Shown here: positions 49,871-64,000 of the stretch, piece after piece
Layout: each line of letters starts with the position of its first letter
Position numbering within the stretch: the first letter of the stretch is position 1
Source of the DNA: Schizochytrium sp. TIO01
Lineage: Eukaryota; Protista; Bigyra: Labyrinthulomycetes
Length of the DNA stretch: 64,000 bases
Direction: 5' to 3'
Assembly (NCBI GenBank): GCA_004764695.1
Contig: SMSO01000037.1
Coordinates: 3,634,747-3,698,746, forward strand
Translations under genes and position numbers: made by a program
Notes under the pieces: generated by a model
What the model was told of the DNA's origin: nothing
The model's database searches: none
The model's input: only the letters and a program-made list of their open reading frames with translations

Positions 49871-50674
49871 TCTCTCTCAAGCCTCTGATGACGCAGCCGC
49901 TGCCACCGCGGTTTAGCTCAGAGAGATCTGAACGTAAGCTTGAACCACCCCGTTGTCACAAGGGGACTTCCGACGTATGTGGCAGTCACCGTGGGCACTG
50001 CGCAATCAAAGGGCACGCTCCACGCGAGGACCTGATCGATTGCTTTGGCGCGAAGGTCGCTCGCTCTTTCATGATTAAACCCGTATTTACATTTTCTCCA
50101 CACTTTGTTGTATTCCCTAATTACCTCTATTCCTAAGTATGATCAGATGATGAGGTGGTACTAAGGCTCAAACAGAGGGAATACATGCATGAAACTTGTA
50201 TTATGGAATGACCGAGGGAGAAAGCAGAATAGGTGGAATGAGTGATTGAAAAAACAGGAGTGAAATTTTGAAACAACCGACAAAGACAATCTGCAAAAGC
50301 TGTTGGGAACTCCAAGTTATTTCAATGTGACAAGAGCAAAGTAGTGATTTACTAGATATCAGCAGCATGTCTTCTTACACATCGACTGCAATCAATTGAT
50401 ATAATTGTAGTCTGCAGCATTAATTTGTAGCTTTACAGCCTAATTGTTTTTTCTTGTTTTTATGTTGTCATCATTAATGAAATATAAATAATGGTGATAG
50501 AAGAACACTTATTGATGATCGATCAATCGTGAATGTTATTTTGCTCCACAAAGGGAGACCCAAAGCCTAAGCTCAAATCTTATATAAATCGCAGACCTCC
50601 GCTTCTCAAACTTTCATAAGGTATCTTGAAGCTAGGTTAGCTGCTTTGACCGCCGGCTAGTGTCTGACGCAACC

Positions 50675-50844
50675 ATGGGCGACCAGGAGAGCCAAAACTG
50701 GCGCCAGGCCGCAGGCACAGGAGTACCAAGGCGCGGACCAGGCGAAGCAGCAACCGCAGCAGCAGCAACAGCAGCAACAGCTCACGATTCTGGACAACCC
50801 AAACCTACGGGAATTGCGGCTCTAGCTGCGAGAGTTAAGAATCA

Positions 50845-50875
<31 letters not shown>

Positions 50876-52879
50876 TATTTTCACCATCGTCAAAACCACC
50901 AAGAACAAGAGCCGCCAAATTATTATCAAGCAAAACATGTTCAGCAGCACTCACAGCGGCAGTACCAATCATCAAGACAACAGAATGGTGCAAATGCAGC
51001 ACATACAAATGGTAGCTCTCAAAAGAAAGTTTCATTAGCACCAACGAATCCGTGGAAAATACTGCAACCGCCTCGAAACCAAGACGCCAATATTGACAAG
51101 TCAGATAGTTCAATGTCGAAGTCTCCTACACAGCCTTTGGGACAGGATATATCCAAGGAGGCTCATCAAAAAGACCTTGATGAATCAGTATTTGCAAGCA
51201 ACACAACTACGACCTCTGCGTCAGATCAGGATCACAAACCGAAACAAGGAAAACGTCAAGGCCAGCAGAAACAGCAACAAGCTGGTGGGAAGCCCAACAA
51301 ATCTCCAAGTGCACCAAGCAACCAACAGCACCAGACTAATGGGCGCCGTAGAAACAATAAAAAGGGCCCTCGTGAGCCCCAGCGTCCAATGGTCATTCTC
51401 CCCGCAGGAGTGGATATGATGAATAAACCTGTGGCAATTTTAGGTGCGAAGCGAATCGACACTTCTGCGATAGCTATTGCAGGTAAGGGAAAAGAATTGT
51501 CCCCGGGGAACTCAGCTTCTCGCTCTGGAGCTGGAAAGAAGCAGTCTAAATCACCAGCCTCTGGAAAACAACAGGATGGAAATAGTGCAGGCTCCAAATC
51601 ACCTTCTGCCCGAGCACCTCTAGCGTCTCCAAGCAAACCCCCTACCCCTAAAGAGAAATCACGTTGGGCACACGAACTAGTAGATGCAAGATTTGGATTC
51701 GCAGCCTCATCTGCTTCTTTGCCAAGTCATTTATGGCATGCCTCAAATAATAAATACCGCGTTGTTGGTGTGTTGGGCACACAAAGCAGTGGGAAAAGCG
51801 CTCTTCTGAACGCATTGGCGACGTCAAGCCTAACATCTAACCCTGCACAAAATGAAGTTCCTTTTGTGGAGAAGGATTTCGAAGATAGACATGGAATTCT
51901 TCATCAAACAAGGGGCATTCAGTCCTCCTTTTGCACTATTGGTGGAGAACGAGTGCTGCTGTTAGATACCCAGCCGGTTTTAAGTCCGTCAATTTTATAC
52001 GACCTCATTGAGCGTCAAGCGAATCTAAACCTGTGCAGTTCGCATGCTTCACTAGCGACCTTACACGACCTTCAGCTTGCGGTATTCTTGCTCTCCGTGT
52101 GTGATGCAGTGTTGGTCGTTGAGGATGACAATGTGCGGGCTCGGGGTCTATGGAAACTCTTACGTTTTGCTTATCTTTCTAAGACTGGCGATGCTATCAA
52201 AGATAAGGTTGCAGATCTAGTTTTAGTGCGAAACTTTATGAGCACCGCAAGGCTTGAATGCGCCGAGACTCTTGGCAAAGAGCAAGATGCCTGGATCAGC
52301 TTTTTCACTGATCTGATCCCATATGCTGCAAGTCATCCAAAACTCTATTTTTGCCCTCTAGGGTTATATGGAAAGTCCATTGATTCCACCGCCTCAGAAG
52401 TAGACTTTATAAAGCACGTTCTTATGTACGAAGTATTTGATGCTGACGGTTCAGCCTCCACCGGGAGAGCTGGGGCATGGTTAGATCATTCTCGAGCAAC
52501 TGATAGCGCATGGTGGCCATCTGTGGCGCTCCCAGACGACTATAACACAGATGGTCATGACTCAATGACCGAGGAGGAAAGCGATTCTGATAGTGATACT
52601 GATGATGGCATTGAAAATGATTCTGGCTGCAACGCCGTTTGCCCGAGTGCAGGAGATTCTTTCGCACATTTGCATACGCTGCTTGCCTACCGTCGAGCTC
52701 ACCCAATTTTTAAGCTGATAGCGTCTTTGAATGCATCAGCACGATCTACATGTACCGATCGCATTAGTGAATCTGACTGGGTTGACCTTGCTAGTCGGCT
52801 TTGGATGCGAGAAATCCCGCATTCAATCCCGCTGCGAGAGTTTGCAGTTGTTTGTGACGGCTTGCTGCTCTCGACGTAA
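50675..52879 (+). CDS. SMG9: Nonsense-mediated decay factor SMG9 (P-loop G-domain) with Gln-rich disordered N-terminus
   Basis: VVGVLGTQSSGKS, HQTRGI, ERVLLLDTQPVLSPSIL and LQLAVFLLSVC. First ATG at 50675. Confidence 0.85.
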
Positions 52880-53335: not shown

Positions 53336-56300
53336 CTAAAGAGCCACCTCGGGGGAAGGATAGATGCCGTAAGCCCGAACACGGTTGATGCCTCCATCGG
53401 GAAAAACCTTCAGACGAAGCTGAGAGACTTCTGGACACGCATCACTGATCTGAAAAACTTTGGCATTGCCAGCGTATGCTTTTACAGGAGTAAGTGCAGC
53501 CATTTCAACCCATTTGCCAGACTTTGACAGGCCCTCCATGGAGATCTCTCTTGGATTGTTATTAACAAAAAAGGTGAAGTCCAGTTCAACGCGCTGCAGC
53601 TTCACAGGCACAGAGAGTTGAATCACTAATTCCTCGTGATGGTTCGGCTCGCGGGAGCGTGCACATTCAAAGCCATCATGCATGGACAAAGGAATAAAAG
53701 GAGAGAGAACTTGGGCAGCTGGGCCATAATGCTGGTTTGTAACGGAAACTAGCTTGCCACCAAATGCAAGACTTGCAGCATCAAACTCTTTTCCTACTAC
53801 AAGAGTAGACAAGTTATGCGCAACCTCCTCAGGTGTTGGCTCATAAAGAAGTTGAAGAGGTTTTTTGGTACTGGGAATTGCATCACTATAGCGAGTGCAC
53901 TTTGAATCCTCTACAGGCACAAAAGTGTCAGTCAAAGATGAGAGCAGAGAGTCTTCTTCGAAGAGTCCCACACGAGAGAGACCCCCATCAGGAAATATGT
54001 CCACTTGAACTTTATCTACCAAAATGGCAGATTGGTAGTCTGGAACCAAAACACGCTTTTCAGCATGACCATCAAGGTGGGTCTTGGGTACTAAAACGAT
54101 CCAGTCATCAGAGTCTTTGCATTTTCCAGAGATTCGCACGTACTCAGCCTGGTTGCCCAAGTGATACTTAGTCGAGATACTAATGTAACGAATACGGCCA
54201 GGACGAGCGAGCGCAAAAATCGCAAAGTCATACTCTTCTGGGTTGTGACGAGCTGTCTCCCAGCTGTCCATAACTTTACCCATAGGGCAAAATAACTCAG
54301 GATCAAATTTGGGTAAGTGATCAGACCCAAGTTGGCACGCTCGCGCGAAGCGCTGGTTAGAGACGCGCTCGACAGTCGAACCAACCAGCAGGTTCGCTGT
54401 TGCTAAAGGGTCCACAGGTCCTTGATCAATGATTTCAGATGGGAGAGTTGGTTCGAACGCCACAAAAACAAGATTCTTGTAGCCAAAGTTAACAATTTCC
54501 TCCTGAGGAATCTGATTGATGTCAACGCTGGAGGTAGGAAACTTCGAGACATCAACACCCTTGAGGTTCATCAGACGGAGAATCGCCTGGCAAGACTCAG
54601 CAATAAAAAACATCGCCCGATTGTCACCATTGGCAAACGCAGTAATACCCTCCCCAGCGTTTGGCCCATCGAAACAATGAATGTAGATGGCACGGTAACC
54701 ATCGTTTGCACCTTGGTGAATCGCAAAGCGGTTAGGGCCTGCCTCACCTACAAAGACGCCAAGTCCCATCAAAACACCCATAAAGTCACGGCACCCTTTA
54801 TCAGTACCATGAAGCATTTTGATAGCGGTATCATGGGAGATTGGACCACAACCTTCCTTGTTGCGGTATGCTTGTCCAAGCTGGTCAAGGAATCGCGTCA
54901 TACCACGCGGGGTACCCAGCGCGCCTGCAGCAAAGGCAGGAAACATCTTTCGAGTTGCCTTAATTGTGCAGCCAATATCATCATAGCCGCATGCAACGTC
55001 ACTGTTCTCGGGTTTGTAAGCAAAGGTAATATCATGTTCGATACCAAGAGCTTGGAGGAAAGGCCTGGTCAATTCGTCAATCGATTTGTCACCACCTTCA
55101 AGCTGCTCAATCAAATGTTGAAGGACAAGAAACCCACCACCGCTGTATTGAAATAAACTTCCAGGCTTACCAACAACATCAATAGGTGGGTATCCATACC
55201 TTTCATTGCCTTCAAGAAAGTCCCGAGTGTCGGGCATTGTTTCATCAAGGGGAACTCCGTTGACGTAATGCATGTTGAGGGCGCTGTGACTCATAAGATG
55301 CCATAGAAGAACCTTGTCACCGTATTTACTGTGACGAATACGAAACGTCGAGGTTGTTTTCTCCAGCAGATCATTGACAGGAGTGTTCAAAGAGATATTG
55401 CGTTCACCAAAGTACTCGATTGCAAACGCAGATCCGATGGTTTTGGAGAGTGAAGCAATTTCAAACATGGTATCTGGCTTGACCGCGGCCTTCATACGGT
55501 GGGCATCCCCGAAGCACACGGGTTGGCCATTAAGGCAAAAGCTAGCGCCAGCAACCTCGTGCTTCTTGCGCAATGACTCAATAGTCTCCAGTAAGTCATC
55601 AGTGGGCTCATCGATGAGACGTTTCATTGTGATTTGCCACAACGCTTCACGTGCATTCTCAAGTTCTTGTTCTGCAGAATTGTTAATTCTATTTTCAAGG
55701 ACGTCGAGAAGTTCTTGGGCTGACTTGCCCTTGGCCGAAACAAGAAACTTGACACCGAACTTTGCAATGTACTCAGCCCCTAATTCACAAAGTCGAAGCC
55801 GAGCATTTTCAGCGTTATCATCCACCGAAGCGAAAACCTTAGCCTGTTCAGCACTTGCAAGCTTGTCGAGCTTACCTGCACCTTGACCAATGTCACCATG
55901 GAACCCAGCAGACTCGATAACTTCTTCTAGGTTGAAACTGCGAATAACTCGTTCTGCTAGTTCCATGTCTGTGGCTACCGTTTTTGCCATGGTTCGCGCA
56001 AATCTCATGGCACCACAACGCTCAAAGAAGTAATGAAATCGCTTTGCATAGGGGTCCTGCATTGCGTATTTTACTGCATCGAATGCGGCCGCAGCCTCCC
56101 ATGGATTTTCACTTGTGCGAATACGATCCACAGTGAATGGATACAACAGTTCAGTCACGAACTCCACTGGTTTGGCGTCACAGACAAACTTGAGAAGGAG
56201 CTCCATAGCGACTGGATACCACTTTGCAGTTTTAGGAGACCACTCTACGTGCACAAGCTTACCTTCGCGCACTTTTCCACGACGGATAGCATTGAGCTCT

Positions 56301-58090
56301 TCATGCGCAATGCGAAGAAAATCCTCTATCGGGAAGCGGCCATGGTGGATCTCAGCCCAGAGCTCCCAACGAGAGCGTTCAATGGTTGCCAAGTCATCAA
56401 GGACCAAAACTTGAACATTGTCCACCCGAGCTGGAAGTCCAACGCAGCCGTTGCCTGCTAGCCAGTCAGCGAGATATTGGAGGGACTGGAAAATGTTATA
56501 TCGGATTTCTTCGGGATCATTGTTTGCAACTTGTGCTGACTCGGCAACGTTAGCAACCACAAGTGAGCGAGCAAAGTTTGGTGCACCAACCTCAACAGGC
56601 CCAGCAGGATCTTGACCTTGAGCAAATGCAAGGATTTCTTCTTGATGAATTTTATCAAGAAGAGTCTCTTTGACGAGCTGTTCAAATGCAGGCATGTCTT
56701 TGTCCCATGTAAGCGCAATGGCAGTGGCCACACGAACATAGCGAGGGTCTGCAAGCCAGAAGCCAGTAAGACCTCTGCGAAGTTGTGTGACAATATCTTT
56801 GAAAAGACCACGCAGAGCAATCTGCAATGAAGCATCTTTTGTGTCCCACGACAAAGGCAAAACACCATACATACCTCCAATAGGCAAGCCTCCACGTCCT
56901 CCAATGACACGAGAAACCAATTCATGGGAAGCCTTGACATGTTTAAGTACAATAGTTGTATCGGCTTTAACCGGAATTCGAAAGTTCGGATCTTCCTTAT
57001 ATAATCGTGCTGTTGCTGCCAGGTAGTCATGCCAGCCCAATGAAGCGCCAGCAAAGTAAGGATGTAAGGCGTCGGCAATCTCATTGGCGCGAAAGATTGC
57101 ACGCGGGTTCTCGAGTACAACTAAAACTCGAACAGTGCCAATCACATATGCTGTATGGATGGCTTTGATTTCGCGCTCAACAGTTTGAATAAGATGTGCA
57201 AGATAGGCAGCCTCTTCTTCGTTTTCAAGTTTCGGCATGTAAAAAACTAAAGCTTCTGGTTTGTCCCAGTGTTCAAGGATATGGAGGGCGAGCTCGAGGA
57301 TGTGGAAAGGTACAGGCTCGCTGTTCGCCTGAAAGACGTACGTACAGGGTAGAGCCAAACCCGGGAGACGCTTGAAAGCTTGAGAGAGAGATGCAGGAGA
57401 GCTAGAGCCCTGGGTCATTTCAGGTTTGCGTTGAAAACATGCTGAGAGGTTAGCGTTGGCAGTTTCGGTCGTATCACGCAAAGGTGTTTGAGAATCTTCA
57501 AAGTCAACACCCCATCGAGGAGGTTTATCTGTGGTAGCCAAAATCTTCTCAACGCAAGCCGGTTCACTTGCAAGGCGAGCGTCATGCGCACAGAGTGCCT
57601 TCTGGCATCCCTCTGCGCTGTCCGCCAGGCCAAAAACTGTAACGTGTTCACCTTTAAGAAATTCCGGTAAAGCTTCGATTTGCTTGCCGGAAGGCTGTGC
57701 AAAGTTGTCGGTAATTGGGCCTATTACCACACGGCCATCAGCATCTCGCTGGCCAAAGATGGTGCCATAGGACTCGTCATTTAGCTTGCGGCCTAGTTTC
57801 GCATTGAGGCCTGCGCAAGCTCGCATGCGCTGGTCAATGAATGCTCTATCTTTTTTGCGTTGCGCAAGGACTTTGGCTAGTTCTTTACGCATCTCGCGAC
57901 AGACTTTTGCCACAAGGCCAGATCCTTGACCAAGGAGTCTCTGCGGGACTGGTTCAGAGACTAAAAGATGTTCATTTGAAACGTGCGCCATCGCATCATC
58001 GCCATCTTCATCTTGGCAGATCTTGCGAGCATCTGACGCAAGGCGCTTTGCAAGCTCCTTCGGGATTGTTTCTTCAAAAAGCATTGTCAT
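53336..58090 (-). CDS. Four-domain purine-catabolism fusion: malate synthase-like + OHCU decarboxylase + beta-lactamase-family serine hydrolase + allantoicase (1584 aa)
   Basis: aa ~50-655: DFEDS, KRLPGL, FYMPKLENEEEA, VVLEN, LGWHDY, GGMYG, WLAGNGCV, DDLATIERSRWELW. aa ~683-826: HGDIG, SAEQ, YIAKFGVKFLVSAKGK, RINNSAEQE, ITMKRL. aa ~832-1175: FEIASLSK, LMSHS, PGSLFQYSGGG, HQGAND. aa ~1232-1576: two allantoicase repeats (MDSWETAR..FPDGGLSRV and DGFECARSR..FPDGGINRVRAYG). Confidence 0.9.
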   Translation of the reverse strand: MTMLFEETIPKELAKRLASDARKICQDEDGDDAMAHVSNEHLLVSEPVPQRLLGQGSGLVAKVCREMRKELAKVLAQRKKDRAFIDQRMRACAGLNAKLGRKLNDESYGTIFGQRDADGRVVIGPITDNFAQPSGKQIEALPEFLKGEHVTVFGLADSAEGCQKALCAHDARLASEPACVEKILATTDKPPRWGVDFEDSQTPLRDTTETANANLSACFQRKPEMTQGSSSPASLSQAFKRLPGLALPCTYVFQANSEPVPFHILELALHILEHWDKPEALVFYMPKLENEEEAAYLAHLIQTVEREIKAIHTAYVIGTVRVLVVLENPRAIFRANEIADALHPYFAGASLGWHDYLAATARLYKEDPNFRIPVKADTTIVLKHVKASHELVSRVIGGRGGLPIGGMYGVLPLSWDTKDASLQIALRGLFKDIVTQLRRGLTGFWLADPRYVRVATAIALTWDKDMPAFEQLVKETLLDKIHQEEILAFAQGQDPAGPVEVGAPNFARSLVVANVAESAQVANNDPEEIRYNIFQSLQYLADWLAGNGCVGLPARVDNVQVLVLDDLATIERSRWELWAEIHHGRFPIEDFLRIAHEELNAIRRGKVREGKLVHVEWSPKTAKWYPVAMELLLKFVCDAKPVEFVTELLYPFTVDRIRTSENPWEAAAAFDAVKYAMQDPYAKRFHYFFERCGAMRFARTMAKTVATDMELAERVIRSFNLEEVIESAGFHGDIGQGAGKLDKLASAEQAKVFASVDDNAENARLRLCELGAEYIAKFGVKFLVSAKGKSAQELLDVLENRINNSAEQELENAREALWQITMKRLIDEPTDDLLETIESLRKKHEVAGASFCLNGQPVCFGDAHRMKAAVKPDTMFEIASLSKTIGSAFAIEYFGERNISLNTPVNDLLEKTTSTFRIRHSKYGDKVLLWHLMSHSALNMHYVNGVPLDETMPDTRDFLEGNERYGYPPIDVVGKPGSLFQYSGGGFLVLQHLIEQLEGGDKSIDELTRPFLQALGIEHDITFAYKPENSDVACGYDDIGCTIKATRKMFPAFAAGALGTPRGMTRFLDQLGQAYRNKEGCGPISHDTAIKMLHGTDKGCRDFMGVLMGLGVFVGEAGPNRFAIHQGANDGYRAIYIHCFDGPNAGEGITAFANGDNRAMFFIAESCQAILRLMNLKGVDVSKFPTSSVDINQIPQEEIVNFGYKNLVFVAFEPTLPSEIIDQGPVDPLATANLLVGSTVERVSNQRFARACQLGSDHLPKFDPELFCPMGKVMDSWETARHNPEEYDFAIFALARPGRIRYISISTKYHLGNQAEYVRISGKCKDSDDWIVLVPKTHLDGHAEKRVLVPDYQSAILVDKVQVDIFPDGGLSRVGLFEEDSLLSSLTDTFVPVEDSKCTRYSDAIPSTKKPLQLLYEPTPEEVAHNLSTLVVGKEFDAASLAFGGKLVSVTNQHYGPAAQVLSPFIPLSMHDGFECARSREPNHHEELVIQLSVPVKLQRVELDFTFFVNNNPREISMEGLSKSGKWVEMAALTPVKAYAGNAKVFQISDACPEVSQLRLKVFPDGGINRVRAYGIYPSPEVAL

Positions 58091-62831: not shown

Positions 62832-64000
62832 ATGTTTGATTTGGATGTAGTTATCGTTGGAGGCGGCATCGCTGGCCTCAGCACCGCGCTGTTCCTTAAG
62901 CGCTTTGGTTACAATGTAGTTGTCTACGAGCGGACTCCTAAAATCTTGCCCGTGGGTGCTGCAATTTCTGTGTGGAGTAATGGTGTCAAGGTAATGAACC
63001 GTCTTGGCTTTGGCAAACAAATGCAGGAGCTTGGAGGCCAGATGGATTCAATGATCTATCGCGACGAAAAGGGCACAGAGCTAGTCAACATGGACTTGCG
63101 TCCGGTATACAAGGAAGTCGGGGAGCGTTGTTATCCGGTACCTCGTGCTGATCTGCAGCAGATGCTCATGGACCAGTATGTCGCCGAGGGTGGCAACTTG
63201 GTCTTGGGTCGTTCCTGCGTCAGCGTTCACAAAGTGGATGAGAGCGACGAGAACAGCAAGCTATATGTGAAGTTCGATGATGGGTCAAAGTCGATGGAGT
63301 GTGACCTTTTGGTCGGTGCTGACGGGATTCGCTCAAATGTTCGCACCTATGTGCTTGAAAAGGAGGTTGCGCCTGTATACCACTACACAAACTGGAATGG
63401 TCTTGTTACCATGGACTCTGCAATTGGCGAGCAGACTGAATGGGTTATGCACGTTGGAGAGGGCAAACGCGCATCGGTCATGCCTGTCGGAAATGGACGA
63501 TTTTACTTTTTCATGGGTGCTCCTATCGCAGAAGATGCCCCCGCACCCGAACGCGGATCGGAGGCTATGCGTGAGGAGCTCAAGCAGATCTTCAAGGGCT
63601 GGCCCGCAAAGGTTCAGAATTTGATTGATGCTATTGATGTTAACACGTTGAACCGCATACCCATTTGCGATGTCGACCCTCTTCCTCACTTGTGGCGTGG
63701 CCACGCGGTACTGATTGGCGATGCTGCTCACTCGACCACACCAACTCTCGGCCAAGGCGGCTGCCAGGCGCTTGAGGACTCGGAGGTGCTTGCATCCTTC
63801 CTCACAACCACCAATGTGGGGGTTGCTGATGCTCTATCTCGTTACCAGCAGCACCGCCTCGAGCGAGTCCACACAATGGTGCTTAAGGCTCGTGAACGTA
63901 CAGCACAAATCTACCCTCGTAATGCAGAACAGGAACGTGCAACACAAGAATGGTATAATGAACTCAAGACTTCCAAGGACATTGGAACTAATATTCTTCG
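62832..64000 (+). CDS. hpxO: FAD-dependent urate hydroxylase (HpxO-like flavin monooxygenase); 3' end runs off the window
   Basis: Manual translation from ATG 62832 (in-frame TAA upstream at 62760): VIVGGGIAGL, GAAISVWSNGVK, RADLQ, LVGADGIRS, YTNWNGLV, VGEGKRASVMPV..GRFYFF, LIGDAAHSTTPTLGQGGCQALED, MVLKARER and WYNEL. These match recalled HpxO-specific motifs beyond the generic monooxygenase fingerprints. Confidence 0.88.
   Translation, partial: MFDLDVVIVGGGIAGLSTALFLKRFGYNVVVYERTPKILPVGAAISVWSNGVKVMNRLGFGKQMQELGGQMDSMIYRDEKGTELVNMDLRPVYKEVGERCYPVPRADLQQMLMDQYVAEGGNLVLGRSCVSVHKVDESDENSKLYVKFDDGSKSMECDLLVGADGIRSNVRTYVLEKEVAPVYHYTNWNGLVTMDSAIGEQTEWVMHVGEGKRASVMPVGNGRFYFFMGAPIAEDAPAPERGSEAMREELKQIFKGWPAKVQNLIDAIDVNTLNRIPICDVDPLPHLWRGHAVLIGDAAHSTTPTLGQGGCQALEDSEVLASFLTTTNVGVADALSRYQQHRLERVHTMVLKARERTAQIYPRNAEQERATQEWYNELKTSKDIGTNIL

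What the first reader, a model, noticed from the sequence alone, without database searches (positions are those of the whole stretch)
54570..55600. Beta-lactamase-fold serine hydrolase as a candidate new class of allantoinase
Seen: an intact SxxK nucleophile motif (S880-L-S-K883), a Tyr motif (Y982-S-G in place of YxN) and an HxG motif (H1125-Q-G). The domain lies between the enzyme that makes allantoin and the enzyme that consumes allantoate. Established: known allantoinases are metal-dependent amidohydrolases (AllB/DAL1) or polysaccharide-deacetylase-fold PuuE, while beta-lactamase-family enzymes hydrolyse cyclic and other amide bonds through an acyl-serine. Inference by Rosetta-stone logic: the domain opens the hydantoin ring of allantoin, giving a third, serine-dependent allantoinase. 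The alternative is HIU hydrolase, the other cyclic-amide step not otherwise encoded here.
Basis: inference. Interest (0 to 1): 0.9.

Follow-up and report, generated by a model that had tools for sequence, protein, structure and literature searches.

The report
Candidate serine-type allantoinase in ureide fusion enzyme
A beta-lactamase-fold domain inside a four-enzyme purine-breakdown protein of a thraustochytrid protist is very probably a new, serine-based kind of allantoinase, because it occurs where the two known allantoinases are missing, but no enzyme assay has been done.

Summary
Window 53336-58090 (-) is one intact 1584-aa ORF. Its domains are malate-synthase-like, OHCU decarboxylase, a PF00144 beta-lactamase-fold domain (aa ~834-1217) and allantoicase.

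The allantoinase reading is strongly supported by comparative genomics but is not proven biochemically.
- This genome has no AllB or PuuE. It does have a canonical HIU hydrolase and an HpxO urate hydroxylase 4.7 kb upstream of the fusion.
- In bacteria the same fusion sits in a conserved operon: PuuD urate oxidase, HIUase, fusion. No other neighbour is conserved except xanthine dehydrogenase.
- Of 93 genomes with the domain, 1 has AllB. Of 51 allantoicase genomes without it, 46 have AllB, usually adjacent to allantoicase. This holds in two phyla.
- HIUase is present in both groups, so the HIU-hydrolase alternative is rejected.
- Stand-alone eukaryotic homologues often end in peroxisomal PTS1 signals.

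I found no paper describing such an enzyme. It would be a third, mechanistically distinct allantoinase class, and it still needs an assay.

The parts
53336..58090 (-). Intact 1584-aa ORF (stop codon included) encoding the four-domain ureide-degradation fusion protein.
   Evidence: The same architecture is found in Hondaea fermentalgiana (78% identity over the BL domain) and in hundreds of bacterial proteins. It is single-copy in this genome.
56141..57514 (-). Malate-synthase-like TIM-barrel domain (aa ~193-650), a candidate ureidoglycolate lyase, or less likely a true malate synthase.
   Evidence: PF01274 and PF20659 match, but TIGR01344 scores only 88 bits against a cut-off of 594. It aligns to E. 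coli malate synthase A (3cuz) with the Arg, Glu, Asp and Asp active-site positions kept. There is precedent for MS-like proteins acting as ureidoglycolate lyase (PMC10120013). Its nearest stand-alone relatives are ~690-aa bacterial proteins.
55616..56047 (-). OHCU decarboxylase domain (aa ~682-825), which makes (S)-allantoin.
   Evidence: PF09349 E 7.6e-18 and NF010372 at aa 682-825. The H-G-[DN]-I-G motif is conserved in 118 of 120 fusion proteins.
54440..55591 (-). Beta-lactamase/transpeptidase-fold serine hydrolase domain (aa 834-1217), the candidate serine-dependent allantoinase.
   Evidence: PF00144 E 8e-19. AlphaFold2 pLDDT 92.3. Foldseek probability 1.0 to family VIII esterase, LACTB, R61 DD-peptidase, AmpC/ADC and D-amino-acid amidase. 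Comparative genomics.
55442..55453 (-). S880-L-S-K883, the predicted nucleophile Ser and general-base Lys.
   Evidence: Invariant in 167 of 167 domains. Aligns with the S-x-x-K motif of class C beta-lactamases.
55139..55147 (-). Y982-S-G, the second motif (Tyr of YxN, with Asn replaced by Gly). It is part of the invariant stretch Y-S-G-x-G-F.
   Evidence: Aligns with Y-S-N of a class C enzyme.
54692..54718 (-). H1125-Q-G-A-N-D-G-Y-R1133, the third motif on strand beta-3 (R61-type HxG) plus the family-specific invariant Asn1129 and Arg1133.
   Evidence: This is the peptide pattern HQ[AG]AN[DE]G[FY]R that retrieved 226 bacterial genomes.
53339..54391 (-). Two allantoicase repeats (aa ~1234-1584), which convert allantoate to ureidoglycolate plus urea.
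   Evidence: PF03561 E 3e-47 with 2 stretches and TIGR02961.
62832..64000 (+). HpxO-type FAD-dependent urate hydroxylase gene. It is transcribed divergently, 4.7 kb upstream of the fusion gene, and runs about 49 bases past the window end. Its product ends in -PRL.
   Evidence: NF033623 urate_HpxO 476.9 bits over the full length (cut-off 500). The next best family scores 195.6 bits.

Best explanation
The PF00144 domain (aa ~834-1217) is an allantoinase of a new, serine-dependent kind.

Inferred pathway. HpxO in this protist, or PuuD in the bacteria, oxidises urate to HIU. A separately encoded canonical HIUase converts HIU to OHCU. The fusion protein then carries out the rest:
- OHCU decarboxylase makes (S)-allantoin.
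- The beta-lactamase-fold domain opens the hydantoin ring to give allantoate.
- Allantoicase releases urea and ureidoglycolate.
- The malate-synthase-like domain most likely acts as ureidoglycolate lyase, giving glyoxylate and urea.

[quoted passage not shown] Ser880, activated by Lys883 and Tyr982, attacks the C4 carbonyl of allantoin. A diureidoacetyl-serine ester forms, stabilised by the oxyanion hole at Ser880 and the H1125-Q-G strand. Water then hydrolyses it. The family-invariant polar residues (His935, His941, Gln1126, Asn1129, Arg1133) probably bind the small ureide substrate.

Shown: the fold, the intact motifs, the domain order, the operon context and the near-exclusive distribution against AllB. 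Inferred: the substrate, the bond cleaved and the roles of individual residues.
For: 1. Gap and candidate coincide. This genome has HpxO, a YRGS-type HIUase and the fusion in a single copy. It has no AllB (best hit 32.9 bits, in an ORF with no amidohydrolase domain), no PuuE, no uricase or PuuD and no AllA-type lyase.
2. Conserved operon. At least 226 bacterial species genomes encode the domain. In the 39 loci of 17 kb or more, the only conserved neighbours are HIUase (37), PuuD (36) and xanthine dehydrogenase genes (14-15). No other gene could hide an allantoinase.
3. Canonical allantoinases are absent. 0 of 50 fusion genomes have AllB above the cut-off, and 0 of 50 have PuuE even at 1e-10. 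The best AllB-like hits are dihydroorotase or dihydropyrimidinase equivalogs.
4. Complementary distribution. In a 401-genome sample of the phylum of G001, 78 allantoicase genomes split as BL+/AllB+ 1, BL+/AllB- 42, BL-/AllB+ 31 and BL-/AllB- 4 (Fisher p 2.9e-16). In the phylum of G031, 15 of 16 BL-negative allantoicase genomes have AllB next to allantoicase, and the BL-positive genome has none.
5. One-for-one replacement. The AllB-type operon reads AllB, allantoicase, OHCU decarboxylase, HIUase, DUF6986. So BL takes the place of AllB one for one.
6. HIUase does not anticorrelate. It is present in 74 of 78 genomes across both types.
7. Architectures. BL+allantoicase, OHCU+BL and OHCU+BL+allantoicase forms exist, and the domain order is preserved.
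8. Catalytic motifs are invariant in 167 of 167 domains, and the model is confident.
9. Among stand-alone homologues, 17 of 67 end in PTS1-like tripeptides such as -SKL, -SRL, -ARL and -AKL. This fits peroxisomal ureide metabolism.
Against: - No biochemical data exist, and allantoin has never been shown to be a substrate of this fold.
- The Asn of the YxN motif is Gly here.
- One genome (G310) carries both an AllB locus and a BL+allantoicase locus.
- Four allantoicase genomes have neither enzyme, so incompleteness or further unknown enzymes exist.
- The genomes are related, so Fisher's p overstates independence. The contrast may rest on few evolutionary events, although it recurs in a second phylum.
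- Many genomes are incomplete MAGs.
- Some fusion genomes carry a dihydropyrimidinase, once about 5 kb from the fusion, which could in principle act on allantoin.
- The eukaryotic algae with stand-alone homologues could not be checked for AllB.
- The role of the MS-like domain is itself unproven.
Confidence: 0.75

Rival explanations
1. The domain is an HIU hydrolase that opens the N1-C6 amide of 5-hydroxyisourate.
For: HIU hydrolysis is also a cyclic-amide cleavage. No HIUase lies inside the window itself.
Against: A canonical HIUase with the diagnostic YRGS end is encoded in this genome. In bacteria an HIUase gene lies directly upstream of the fusion: in 5 of 5 good genomes and in 37 of 39 long loci. 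HIUase is found in 74 of 78 genomes whether or not they carry the domain. The domain instead anticorrelates with AllB.
Confidence: 0.03
2. The domain catalyses another ureide-related reaction. Examples are ureidoglycolate amidohydrolase or lyase, with the MS-like domain as a true malate synthase, or allantoin racemisation, or clearing of a side product. Allantoin hydrolysis would then be done by an unrecognised enzyme.
For: AllA-type ureidoglycolate lyase is also absent from this genome and from 0 of 50 fusion genomes. The MS-like domain keeps the malate-synthase catalytic positions. So two steps and two unassigned domains exist.
Against: No other conserved gene accompanies the operon. The domain substitutes specifically for AllB, while a different MS/CitE-like protein (DUF6986) accompanies the AllB-type operon. 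Three of five fusion genomes also have a canonical malate synthase. An MS-like protein is an experimentally shown ureidoglycolate lyase (PMC10120013). From general knowledge: ureidoglycolate decays spontaneously and allantoicase is reported to act on it, whereas allantoin hydrolysis needs an enzyme. OHCU decarboxylase gives only (S)-allantoin, so a racemase is not needed.
Confidence: 0.12
3. The domain has no role in the pathway's chemistry. It would be a structural or oligomerisation spacer, a regulatory ligand-binding module, or a peptidase/esterase fused by chance.
For: PF00144 is a very large and functionally diverse family. Some members, such as LACTB, form filaments.
Against: The Ser, Lys, Tyr and His motifs plus Asn1129 and Arg1133 are invariant in 167 of 167 domains across bacteria and eukaryotes. 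Every homologue found is either fused to ureide enzymes or a stand-alone protein, often with a PTS1 end. This reading leaves the allantoinase gap unexplained in 92 genomes.
Confidence: 0.05

Closest known systems
AllB/DAL1/PucH allantoinase (cyclic amidohydrolase superfamily, TIGR03178)
   Same: It has the proposed reaction, (S)-allantoin to allantoate. It occupies the same place in the operon, adjacent to allantoicase, OHCU decarboxylase and HIUase.
   Different: AllB is an unrelated TIM-barrel enzyme with a binuclear metal centre and a carbamylated lysine. The domain here has a beta-lactamase fold with a Ser-Lys-Tyr active site and no metal ligands. The two are almost mutually exclusive in genomes.
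PuuE/HpxB metal-independent allantoinase (polysaccharide-deacetylase fold, TIGR03212)
   Same: It is an earlier example of a non-homologous allantoinase found by genome-context logic, and it is metal-independent.
   Different: The fold is different and it has no serine acyl-enzyme. PuuE is absent from this genome and from all 67 genomes tested for it.
Class C beta-lactamases, Streptomyces R61 DD-peptidase, family VIII esterases (IS11, EstB), D-amino-acid amidase, LACTB (PF00144)
   Same: The fold is shared (Foldseek probability 1.0, TM 0.6-0.68). S-x-x-K sits at a helix start, and there is a Tyr motif and an R61-type H-x-G strand motif.
   Different: Identity is only 15-20%. NCBIfam class C scores 25.8 bits against a cut-off of 415. 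Asn of YxN is Gly. The family has its own invariant residues (H935, H941-Y942, Q1126, N1129, R1133). The protein is cytosolic or peroxisomal, is fused to ureide enzymes, and has no link to cell-wall or antibiotic chemistry.
Natural uricolytic fusions: allantoin synthase (HIUase + OHCU decarboxylase) of plants, diatoms and bacteria
   Same: Consecutive purine-catabolic enzymes are joined in one polypeptide (PMC13751858).
   Different: Here four domains are joined, HIUase stays separate, and one of the domains is of a family not previously linked to the pathway.
Malate-synthase-like ureidoglycolate lyase (zebrafish MSL/UGL, Dembech et al. 2023, PMC10120013)
   Same: It gives a precedent for the N-terminal MS-like domain acting in purine catabolism rather than in the glyoxylate cycle.
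   Different: The domain here belongs to a ~690-aa, mainly bacterial family, whereas the paper describes its UGL group as eukaryote-only. Whether this one is a UGL or a malate synthase was not resolved.

Membership tests
PF00144 beta-lactamase/transpeptidase-like serine hydrolases | Profile match above Pfam's gathering score | tested here: met
   68.4 bits against a cut-off of 27, E 8e-19, aa 836-1157.
PF00144 beta-lactamase/transpeptidase-like serine hydrolases | Two-domain alpha/beta plus all-alpha fold | tested here: met
   AlphaFold2 pLDDT 92.3. Foldseek probability 1.0 and TM 0.6-0.68 to 7spn, 2qmi, 7v21, 1ikg, ADC/AmpC and 2drw.
PF00144 beta-lactamase/transpeptidase-like serine hydrolases | Motif 1, S-x-x-K at the N-terminus of helix alpha-2 | tested here: met
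   S880-L-S-K883. A helix starts at model residue 57. It aligns with SVSK and SLSK of class C enzymes. Invariant in 167 of 167 domains.
PF00144 beta-lactamase/transpeptidase-like serine hydrolases | Motif 2, Y-x-N | tested here: inconclusive
   Tyr982 is present and invariant, and it aligns with Y-S-N of a class C enzyme. The Asn is Gly984 in all 167 members.
PF00144 beta-lactamase/transpeptidase-like serine hydrolases | Motif 3, K-T-G or H-x-G on strand beta-3 | tested here: met
   H1125-Q-G lies on a predicted strand. H and Q are invariant and the third position is G or A.
Class C beta-lactamase proper (NF033085) | Equivalog score above the curated cut-off | tested here: not met
   25.8 bits against a cut-off of 415. 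It is not an antibiotic-resistance beta-lactamase by this test.
AllB/DAL1 allantoinase (TIGR03178) | Homology to the cyclic amidohydrolase family | tested here: not met
   No amidohydrolase family matches the ORF. If the domain is an allantoinase, it is an analogue and not a member.
PuuE allantoinase (TIGR03212) | Homology to the polysaccharide-deacetylase-like family | tested here: not met
   There is no match in the ORF or anywhere in the genome.
Allantoinase as an activity (EC 3.5.2.5) | Hydrolysis of (S)-allantoin to allantoate | not testable with these tools
   Only indirect support is available: pathway gap, operon context and near-exclusive distribution against AllB.
HIU hydrolase (PF00576, transthyretin-like) | Transthyretin-like fold with a C-terminal YRGS | tested here: not met
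   The domain is not transthyretin-like. The true HIUase is a separate 129-aa ORF ending in YRGS on contig C33.

The most novel reading that the evidence does not exclude
A third, mechanistically distinct class of allantoinase exists. It is a beta-lactamase-fold enzyme that works through an acyl-serine intermediate. It has displaced AllB in most uricolytic Bdellovibrionota and in some Planctomycetia. It is fused into a four-enzyme ureide-degradation line in those bacteria and in thraustochytrids. It also occurs as a stand-alone, PTS1-tagged, probably peroxisomal enzyme in marine algae such as Prymnesium and Symbiodinium.
Probability: 0.72. Interest if true: 0.85.

Novelty: new variant of a known kind. 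Interest (0 to 1): 0.8.

Why it matters
- Allantoinase is a textbook step of purine nitrogen recycling, with two known non-homologous solutions (AllB/DAL1 and PuuE). A third, serine-based one would add a new reaction type to the beta-lactamase/penicillin-binding fold.
- It would fill an annotation gap in hundreds of genomes, where the protein is now called 'serine hydrolase' or 'malate synthase'.
- It would correct metabolic models of predatory bacteria, thraustochytrids (which are industrial DHA producers) and marine algae that appear unable to use allantoin.
- It would give a metal-independent, covalent-mechanism enzyme of possible use in biocatalysis of hydantoins.
- The four-domain polypeptide is also a natural model for the co-localisation of consecutive enzymes. 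Its sharing between bacteria and protists raises a question of gene transfer.

Tried and rejected
- HIU hydrolase reading: rejected.
- Hidden canonical allantoinase: the strongest AllB-like hits (250-291 bits) in fusion genomes were fetched and turned out to be dihydroorotase or dihydropyrimidinase equivalogs. The one weak hit in this genome has no amidohydrolase domain.
- Hidden conserved neighbour: clustering all ORFs of 39 long loci found nothing conserved beyond PuuD, HIUase and xanthine dehydrogenase. The L012-specific neighbours (PAP2, a kinase-like protein, a 292-aa ORF) occur in only 2-3 loci.
- Literature: six full-text searches found no description of a beta-lactamase-fold allantoinase or of this fusion.
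- ESM Atlas returned only generic PF00144 clusters.
- Expression: 24 public runs hold the ORF, but none is on record as RNA.
- MS versus UGL for the N-terminal domain was not resolved.
Full report
**What is in the window.** Window 53336-58090 (- strand) is one uninterrupted ORF of 1584 codons.
- Pfam finds a malate-synthase TIM barrel and C-terminal domain (aa 255-650) and an OHCU decarboxylase (aa 709-825).
- It also finds PF00144 Beta-lactamase (aa 836-1157, E 8e-19) and two allantoicase repeats (aa 1237 to the end). NCBIfam agrees.
- The finding's coordinates 54570-55600 are aa 831-1174.
- The three motifs are at exactly the stated residues: S880-L-S-K883, Y982-S-G and H1125-Q-G.
- The window looks eukaryotic, with sparse ORFs, cyclin, Arp2/3 p34 and an ABCA transporter.
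- The closest named protein is from the thraustochytrid Hondaea fermentalgiana, at 78% identity over the domain.
- The genome has 64 Mb in 37 contigs.

**The domain is a real, probably active serine hydrolase.**
- An AlphaFold2 model built on 23 homologues has mean pLDDT 92.3.
- Foldseek matches it with probability 1.0 (TM 0.6-0.68, 15-20% identity) to a family VIII esterase, a Pyrococcus PBP homologue, LACTB, R61 DD-peptidase, AmpC/ADC class C beta-lactamases and D-amino-acid amidase.
- A profile search of PDB sequences aligns S-L-S-K with the class C nucleophile motif and Y-S-G with Y-S-N.
- In 167 near-complete domains from fusions and stand-alone proteins, SLSK, YSG, H1125, Q1126, N1129 and R1133 are invariant in 167 of 167. 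H935, H941, F1050-P1051 and others are invariant or nearly so.
- It is not a class C beta-lactamase proper: 25.8 bits against a cut-off of 415.

**Distribution and architectures.**
- The four-domain architecture recurs in hundreds of protein clusters. The named ones come mostly from Bacteriovorax, Halobacteriovorax, Oligoflexus, Bdellovibrionales and Planctomycetes.
- Shorter forms lack the MS-like part, and one form carries an added uricase domain.
- Searching with the domain alone finds BL+allantoicase and OHCU+BL two-domain forms. It also finds about 400-450-aa stand-alone proteins from Prymnesium parvum, Symbiodinium, MMETSP and EukProt sets.
- 17 of 67 stand-alone proteins end in PTS1-like tripeptides: SKL, ARL, SRL, AKL and others.
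- A FastTree of 101 domains separates a stand-alone clade from a fused clade. The window groups with Hondaea and seven others (support 98), beside the bacterial fusions. The direction of any transfer is unresolved.
- At least 226 species-level bacterial genomes encode a relative.

**The pathway in this genome.**
- A canonical HIU hydrolase (125.6 bits) ending in YRGS lies on contig C33.
- An HpxO-type urate hydroxylase starts at window 62832. It is divergent from the fusion gene and 4.7 kb away. It scores 476.9 bits for NF033623 and ends in -PRL.
- There is no AllB. The best hit is 32.9 bits, in an ORF without any amidohydrolase domain.
- There is also no PuuE, no uricase, no PuuD and no AllA-type ureidoglycolate lyase.
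- There is no other malate synthase A, and the domain has a single copy.
- So every step from urate to ureidoglycolate has a gene except allantoinase, and the only unassigned catalytic domain sits between the allantoin-making and the allantoate-using domains.

**Bacterial operons.**
- In Peredibacter sp. (L012) the order is PuuD-type urate oxidase, HIUase, fusion gene. XdhC and xanthine dehydrogenase lie downstream on the other strand.
- Across 80 loci, tblastn finds HIUase in 60 and PuuD in 59. Most of the loci that lack them are short contigs.
- In the 39 loci of 17 kb or more, ORF clustering finds the fusion in 39, HIUase in 37, PuuD in 36, xanthine dehydrogenase genes in 14-15, and nothing else conserved.
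- No AllB above the cut-off was found in 50 fusion genomes (maximum 290.9 bits against 357.85). No PuuE was found even at 1e-10.
- The best AllB-like hits are dihydroorotases or dihydropyrimidinases that pass their own equivalog cut-offs.

**Complementary distribution, the strongest evidence.**
- In 401 genomes sampled from the phylum of G001, 95 carry allantoicase. By record titles this phylum is Bdellovibrionota.
- The allantoicases are of two kinds: stand-alone genes of about 350 aa, and frames of about 1550 aa.
- I tested 78 of them; the other 17 were already among the 50. AllB is above the cut-off in 31 of 34 stand-alone-type genomes, nearly always directly adjacent to allantoicase.
- Only one genome on the fusion-type list has AllB (G288), and it proved to lack the domain.
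- The table is BL+/AllB+ 1 (G310, which has both loci), BL+/AllB- 42, BL-/AllB+ 31 and BL-/AllB- 4. Fisher p is 2.9e-16.
- HIUase is present in 74 of 78 genomes, in both types.
- An AllB-type operon (G114) reads AllB, allantoicase, OHCU decarboxylase, HIUase, DUF6986. The beta-lactamase-fold domain therefore replaces AllB one for one.
- In a second phylum, that of G031 (labelled Planctomycetia), 17 of 351 genomes have allantoicase. Of the 16 without the domain, 15 have AllB next to allantoicase. The one with the fusion has neither AllB nor PuuE.
- Overall, 1 of 93 domain-bearing genomes has AllB, against 46 of 51 allantoicase genomes without the domain.
- Caveats: the genomes are related, so these are not independent observations, and many are incomplete MAGs.

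**The other domains.**
- The MS-like domain aligns with E. coli malate synthase A with the Arg, Glu, Asp and Asp active-site positions kept.
- It scores far below the malate synthase cut-off, and its nearest stand-alone relatives are ~690-aa bacterial proteins.
- Dembech et al. 2023 showed that vertebrate malate-synthase-like proteins are (S)-ureidoglycolate lyases (PMC10120013).
- AllA-type lyase is absent from 50 of 50 fusion genomes, and three of five also have a canonical malate synthase. I therefore favour ureidoglycolate lyase for this domain, but I did not resolve it.
- Either way, allantoin hydrolysis is the one step with no other candidate.

**Mechanism, novelty and limits.**
[quoted passage not shown] Ser880 attacks the C4 carbonyl of the hydantoin ring, a diureidoacetyl-enzyme forms, and it is hydrolysed with Tyr982 and Lys883 as acid/base.
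- Six literature searches found no description of such an enzyme or of this fusion. A 2026 review of uricolytic enzymes lists only the metal-dependent and metal-independent allantoinases.

Noticed in passing
window 62832-64000 (+), continuing about 49 bases beyond the window end (L102:79-1296): A bacterial-type FAD-dependent urate hydroxylase (HpxO, 476.9 bits, just under the cut-off of 500) lies divergently 4.7 kb from the fusion gene and ends in -PRL. The genome has neither classical uricase nor PuuD. Together with the fusion it forms a small purine-catabolism gene pair in a eukaryote, which may point to gene transfer with bacteria.
   Followed up: partly
L104:8071-9477 (+), genome G114: In AllB-type uricolytic operons of the same bacterial phylum, a DUF6986 protein (PF22484, 468 aa) follows HIUase. 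It aligns weakly but collinearly with the MS-like domain over the HpcH/CitE/malate-synthase motifs (BLASTP E 0.13), and its best PDB hit is citrate lyase beta-like protein (E 0.44). It may be the counterpart of the MS-like domain, that is, another candidate ureidoglycolate lyase.
   Followed up: partly
window 56141-57514 (-), aa ~193-650 of the ORF: The MS-like domain belongs to a large family of ~690-aa stand-alone bacterial proteins (Desulfogranum, Desulfosediminicola, Myxococcota, Bradymonadaceae, Planctomycetota; 45-49% identity). These are annotated only as aldolase/citrate lyase/malate synthase family. The 2023 paper that defined MS-like ureidoglycolate lyases describes its UGL group as eukaryote-only.
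   Followed up: partly
window 55616-56047 (-), OHCU decarboxylase domain: The conserved histidine motif reads H-G-[DN]-I-G in 118 of 120 fusion proteins. From memory, stand-alone OHCU decarboxylases have H-P-x-[IL]-G there. I did not check this against reference sequences.
   Followed up: no
genome G310 (contigs C1, C12, C16): This is the only genome with both an AllB, allantoicase, HIUase locus and a BL+allantoicase frame (774 aa). It could be a true double system, an intermediate in the displacement, or a mixed metagenomic bin.
   Followed up: no
L009:17220 (+), genome G007 contig C4: A dihydropyrimidinase (TIGR02033, 606 bits) lies about 5 kb downstream of the fusion gene in one Bdellovibrionales MAG, so pyrimidine and purine ring-opening genes are neighbours there.
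   Followed up: partly
They lie in a low-complexity stretch of the intergenic region upstream of the fusion gene.
   Followed up: no
window 50660-52879 (+): A 739-aa ORF lies next to the 3' end of the fusion gene on the opposite strand, so the two genes converge. It has no Pfam match at E 1e-4.
   Followed up: no
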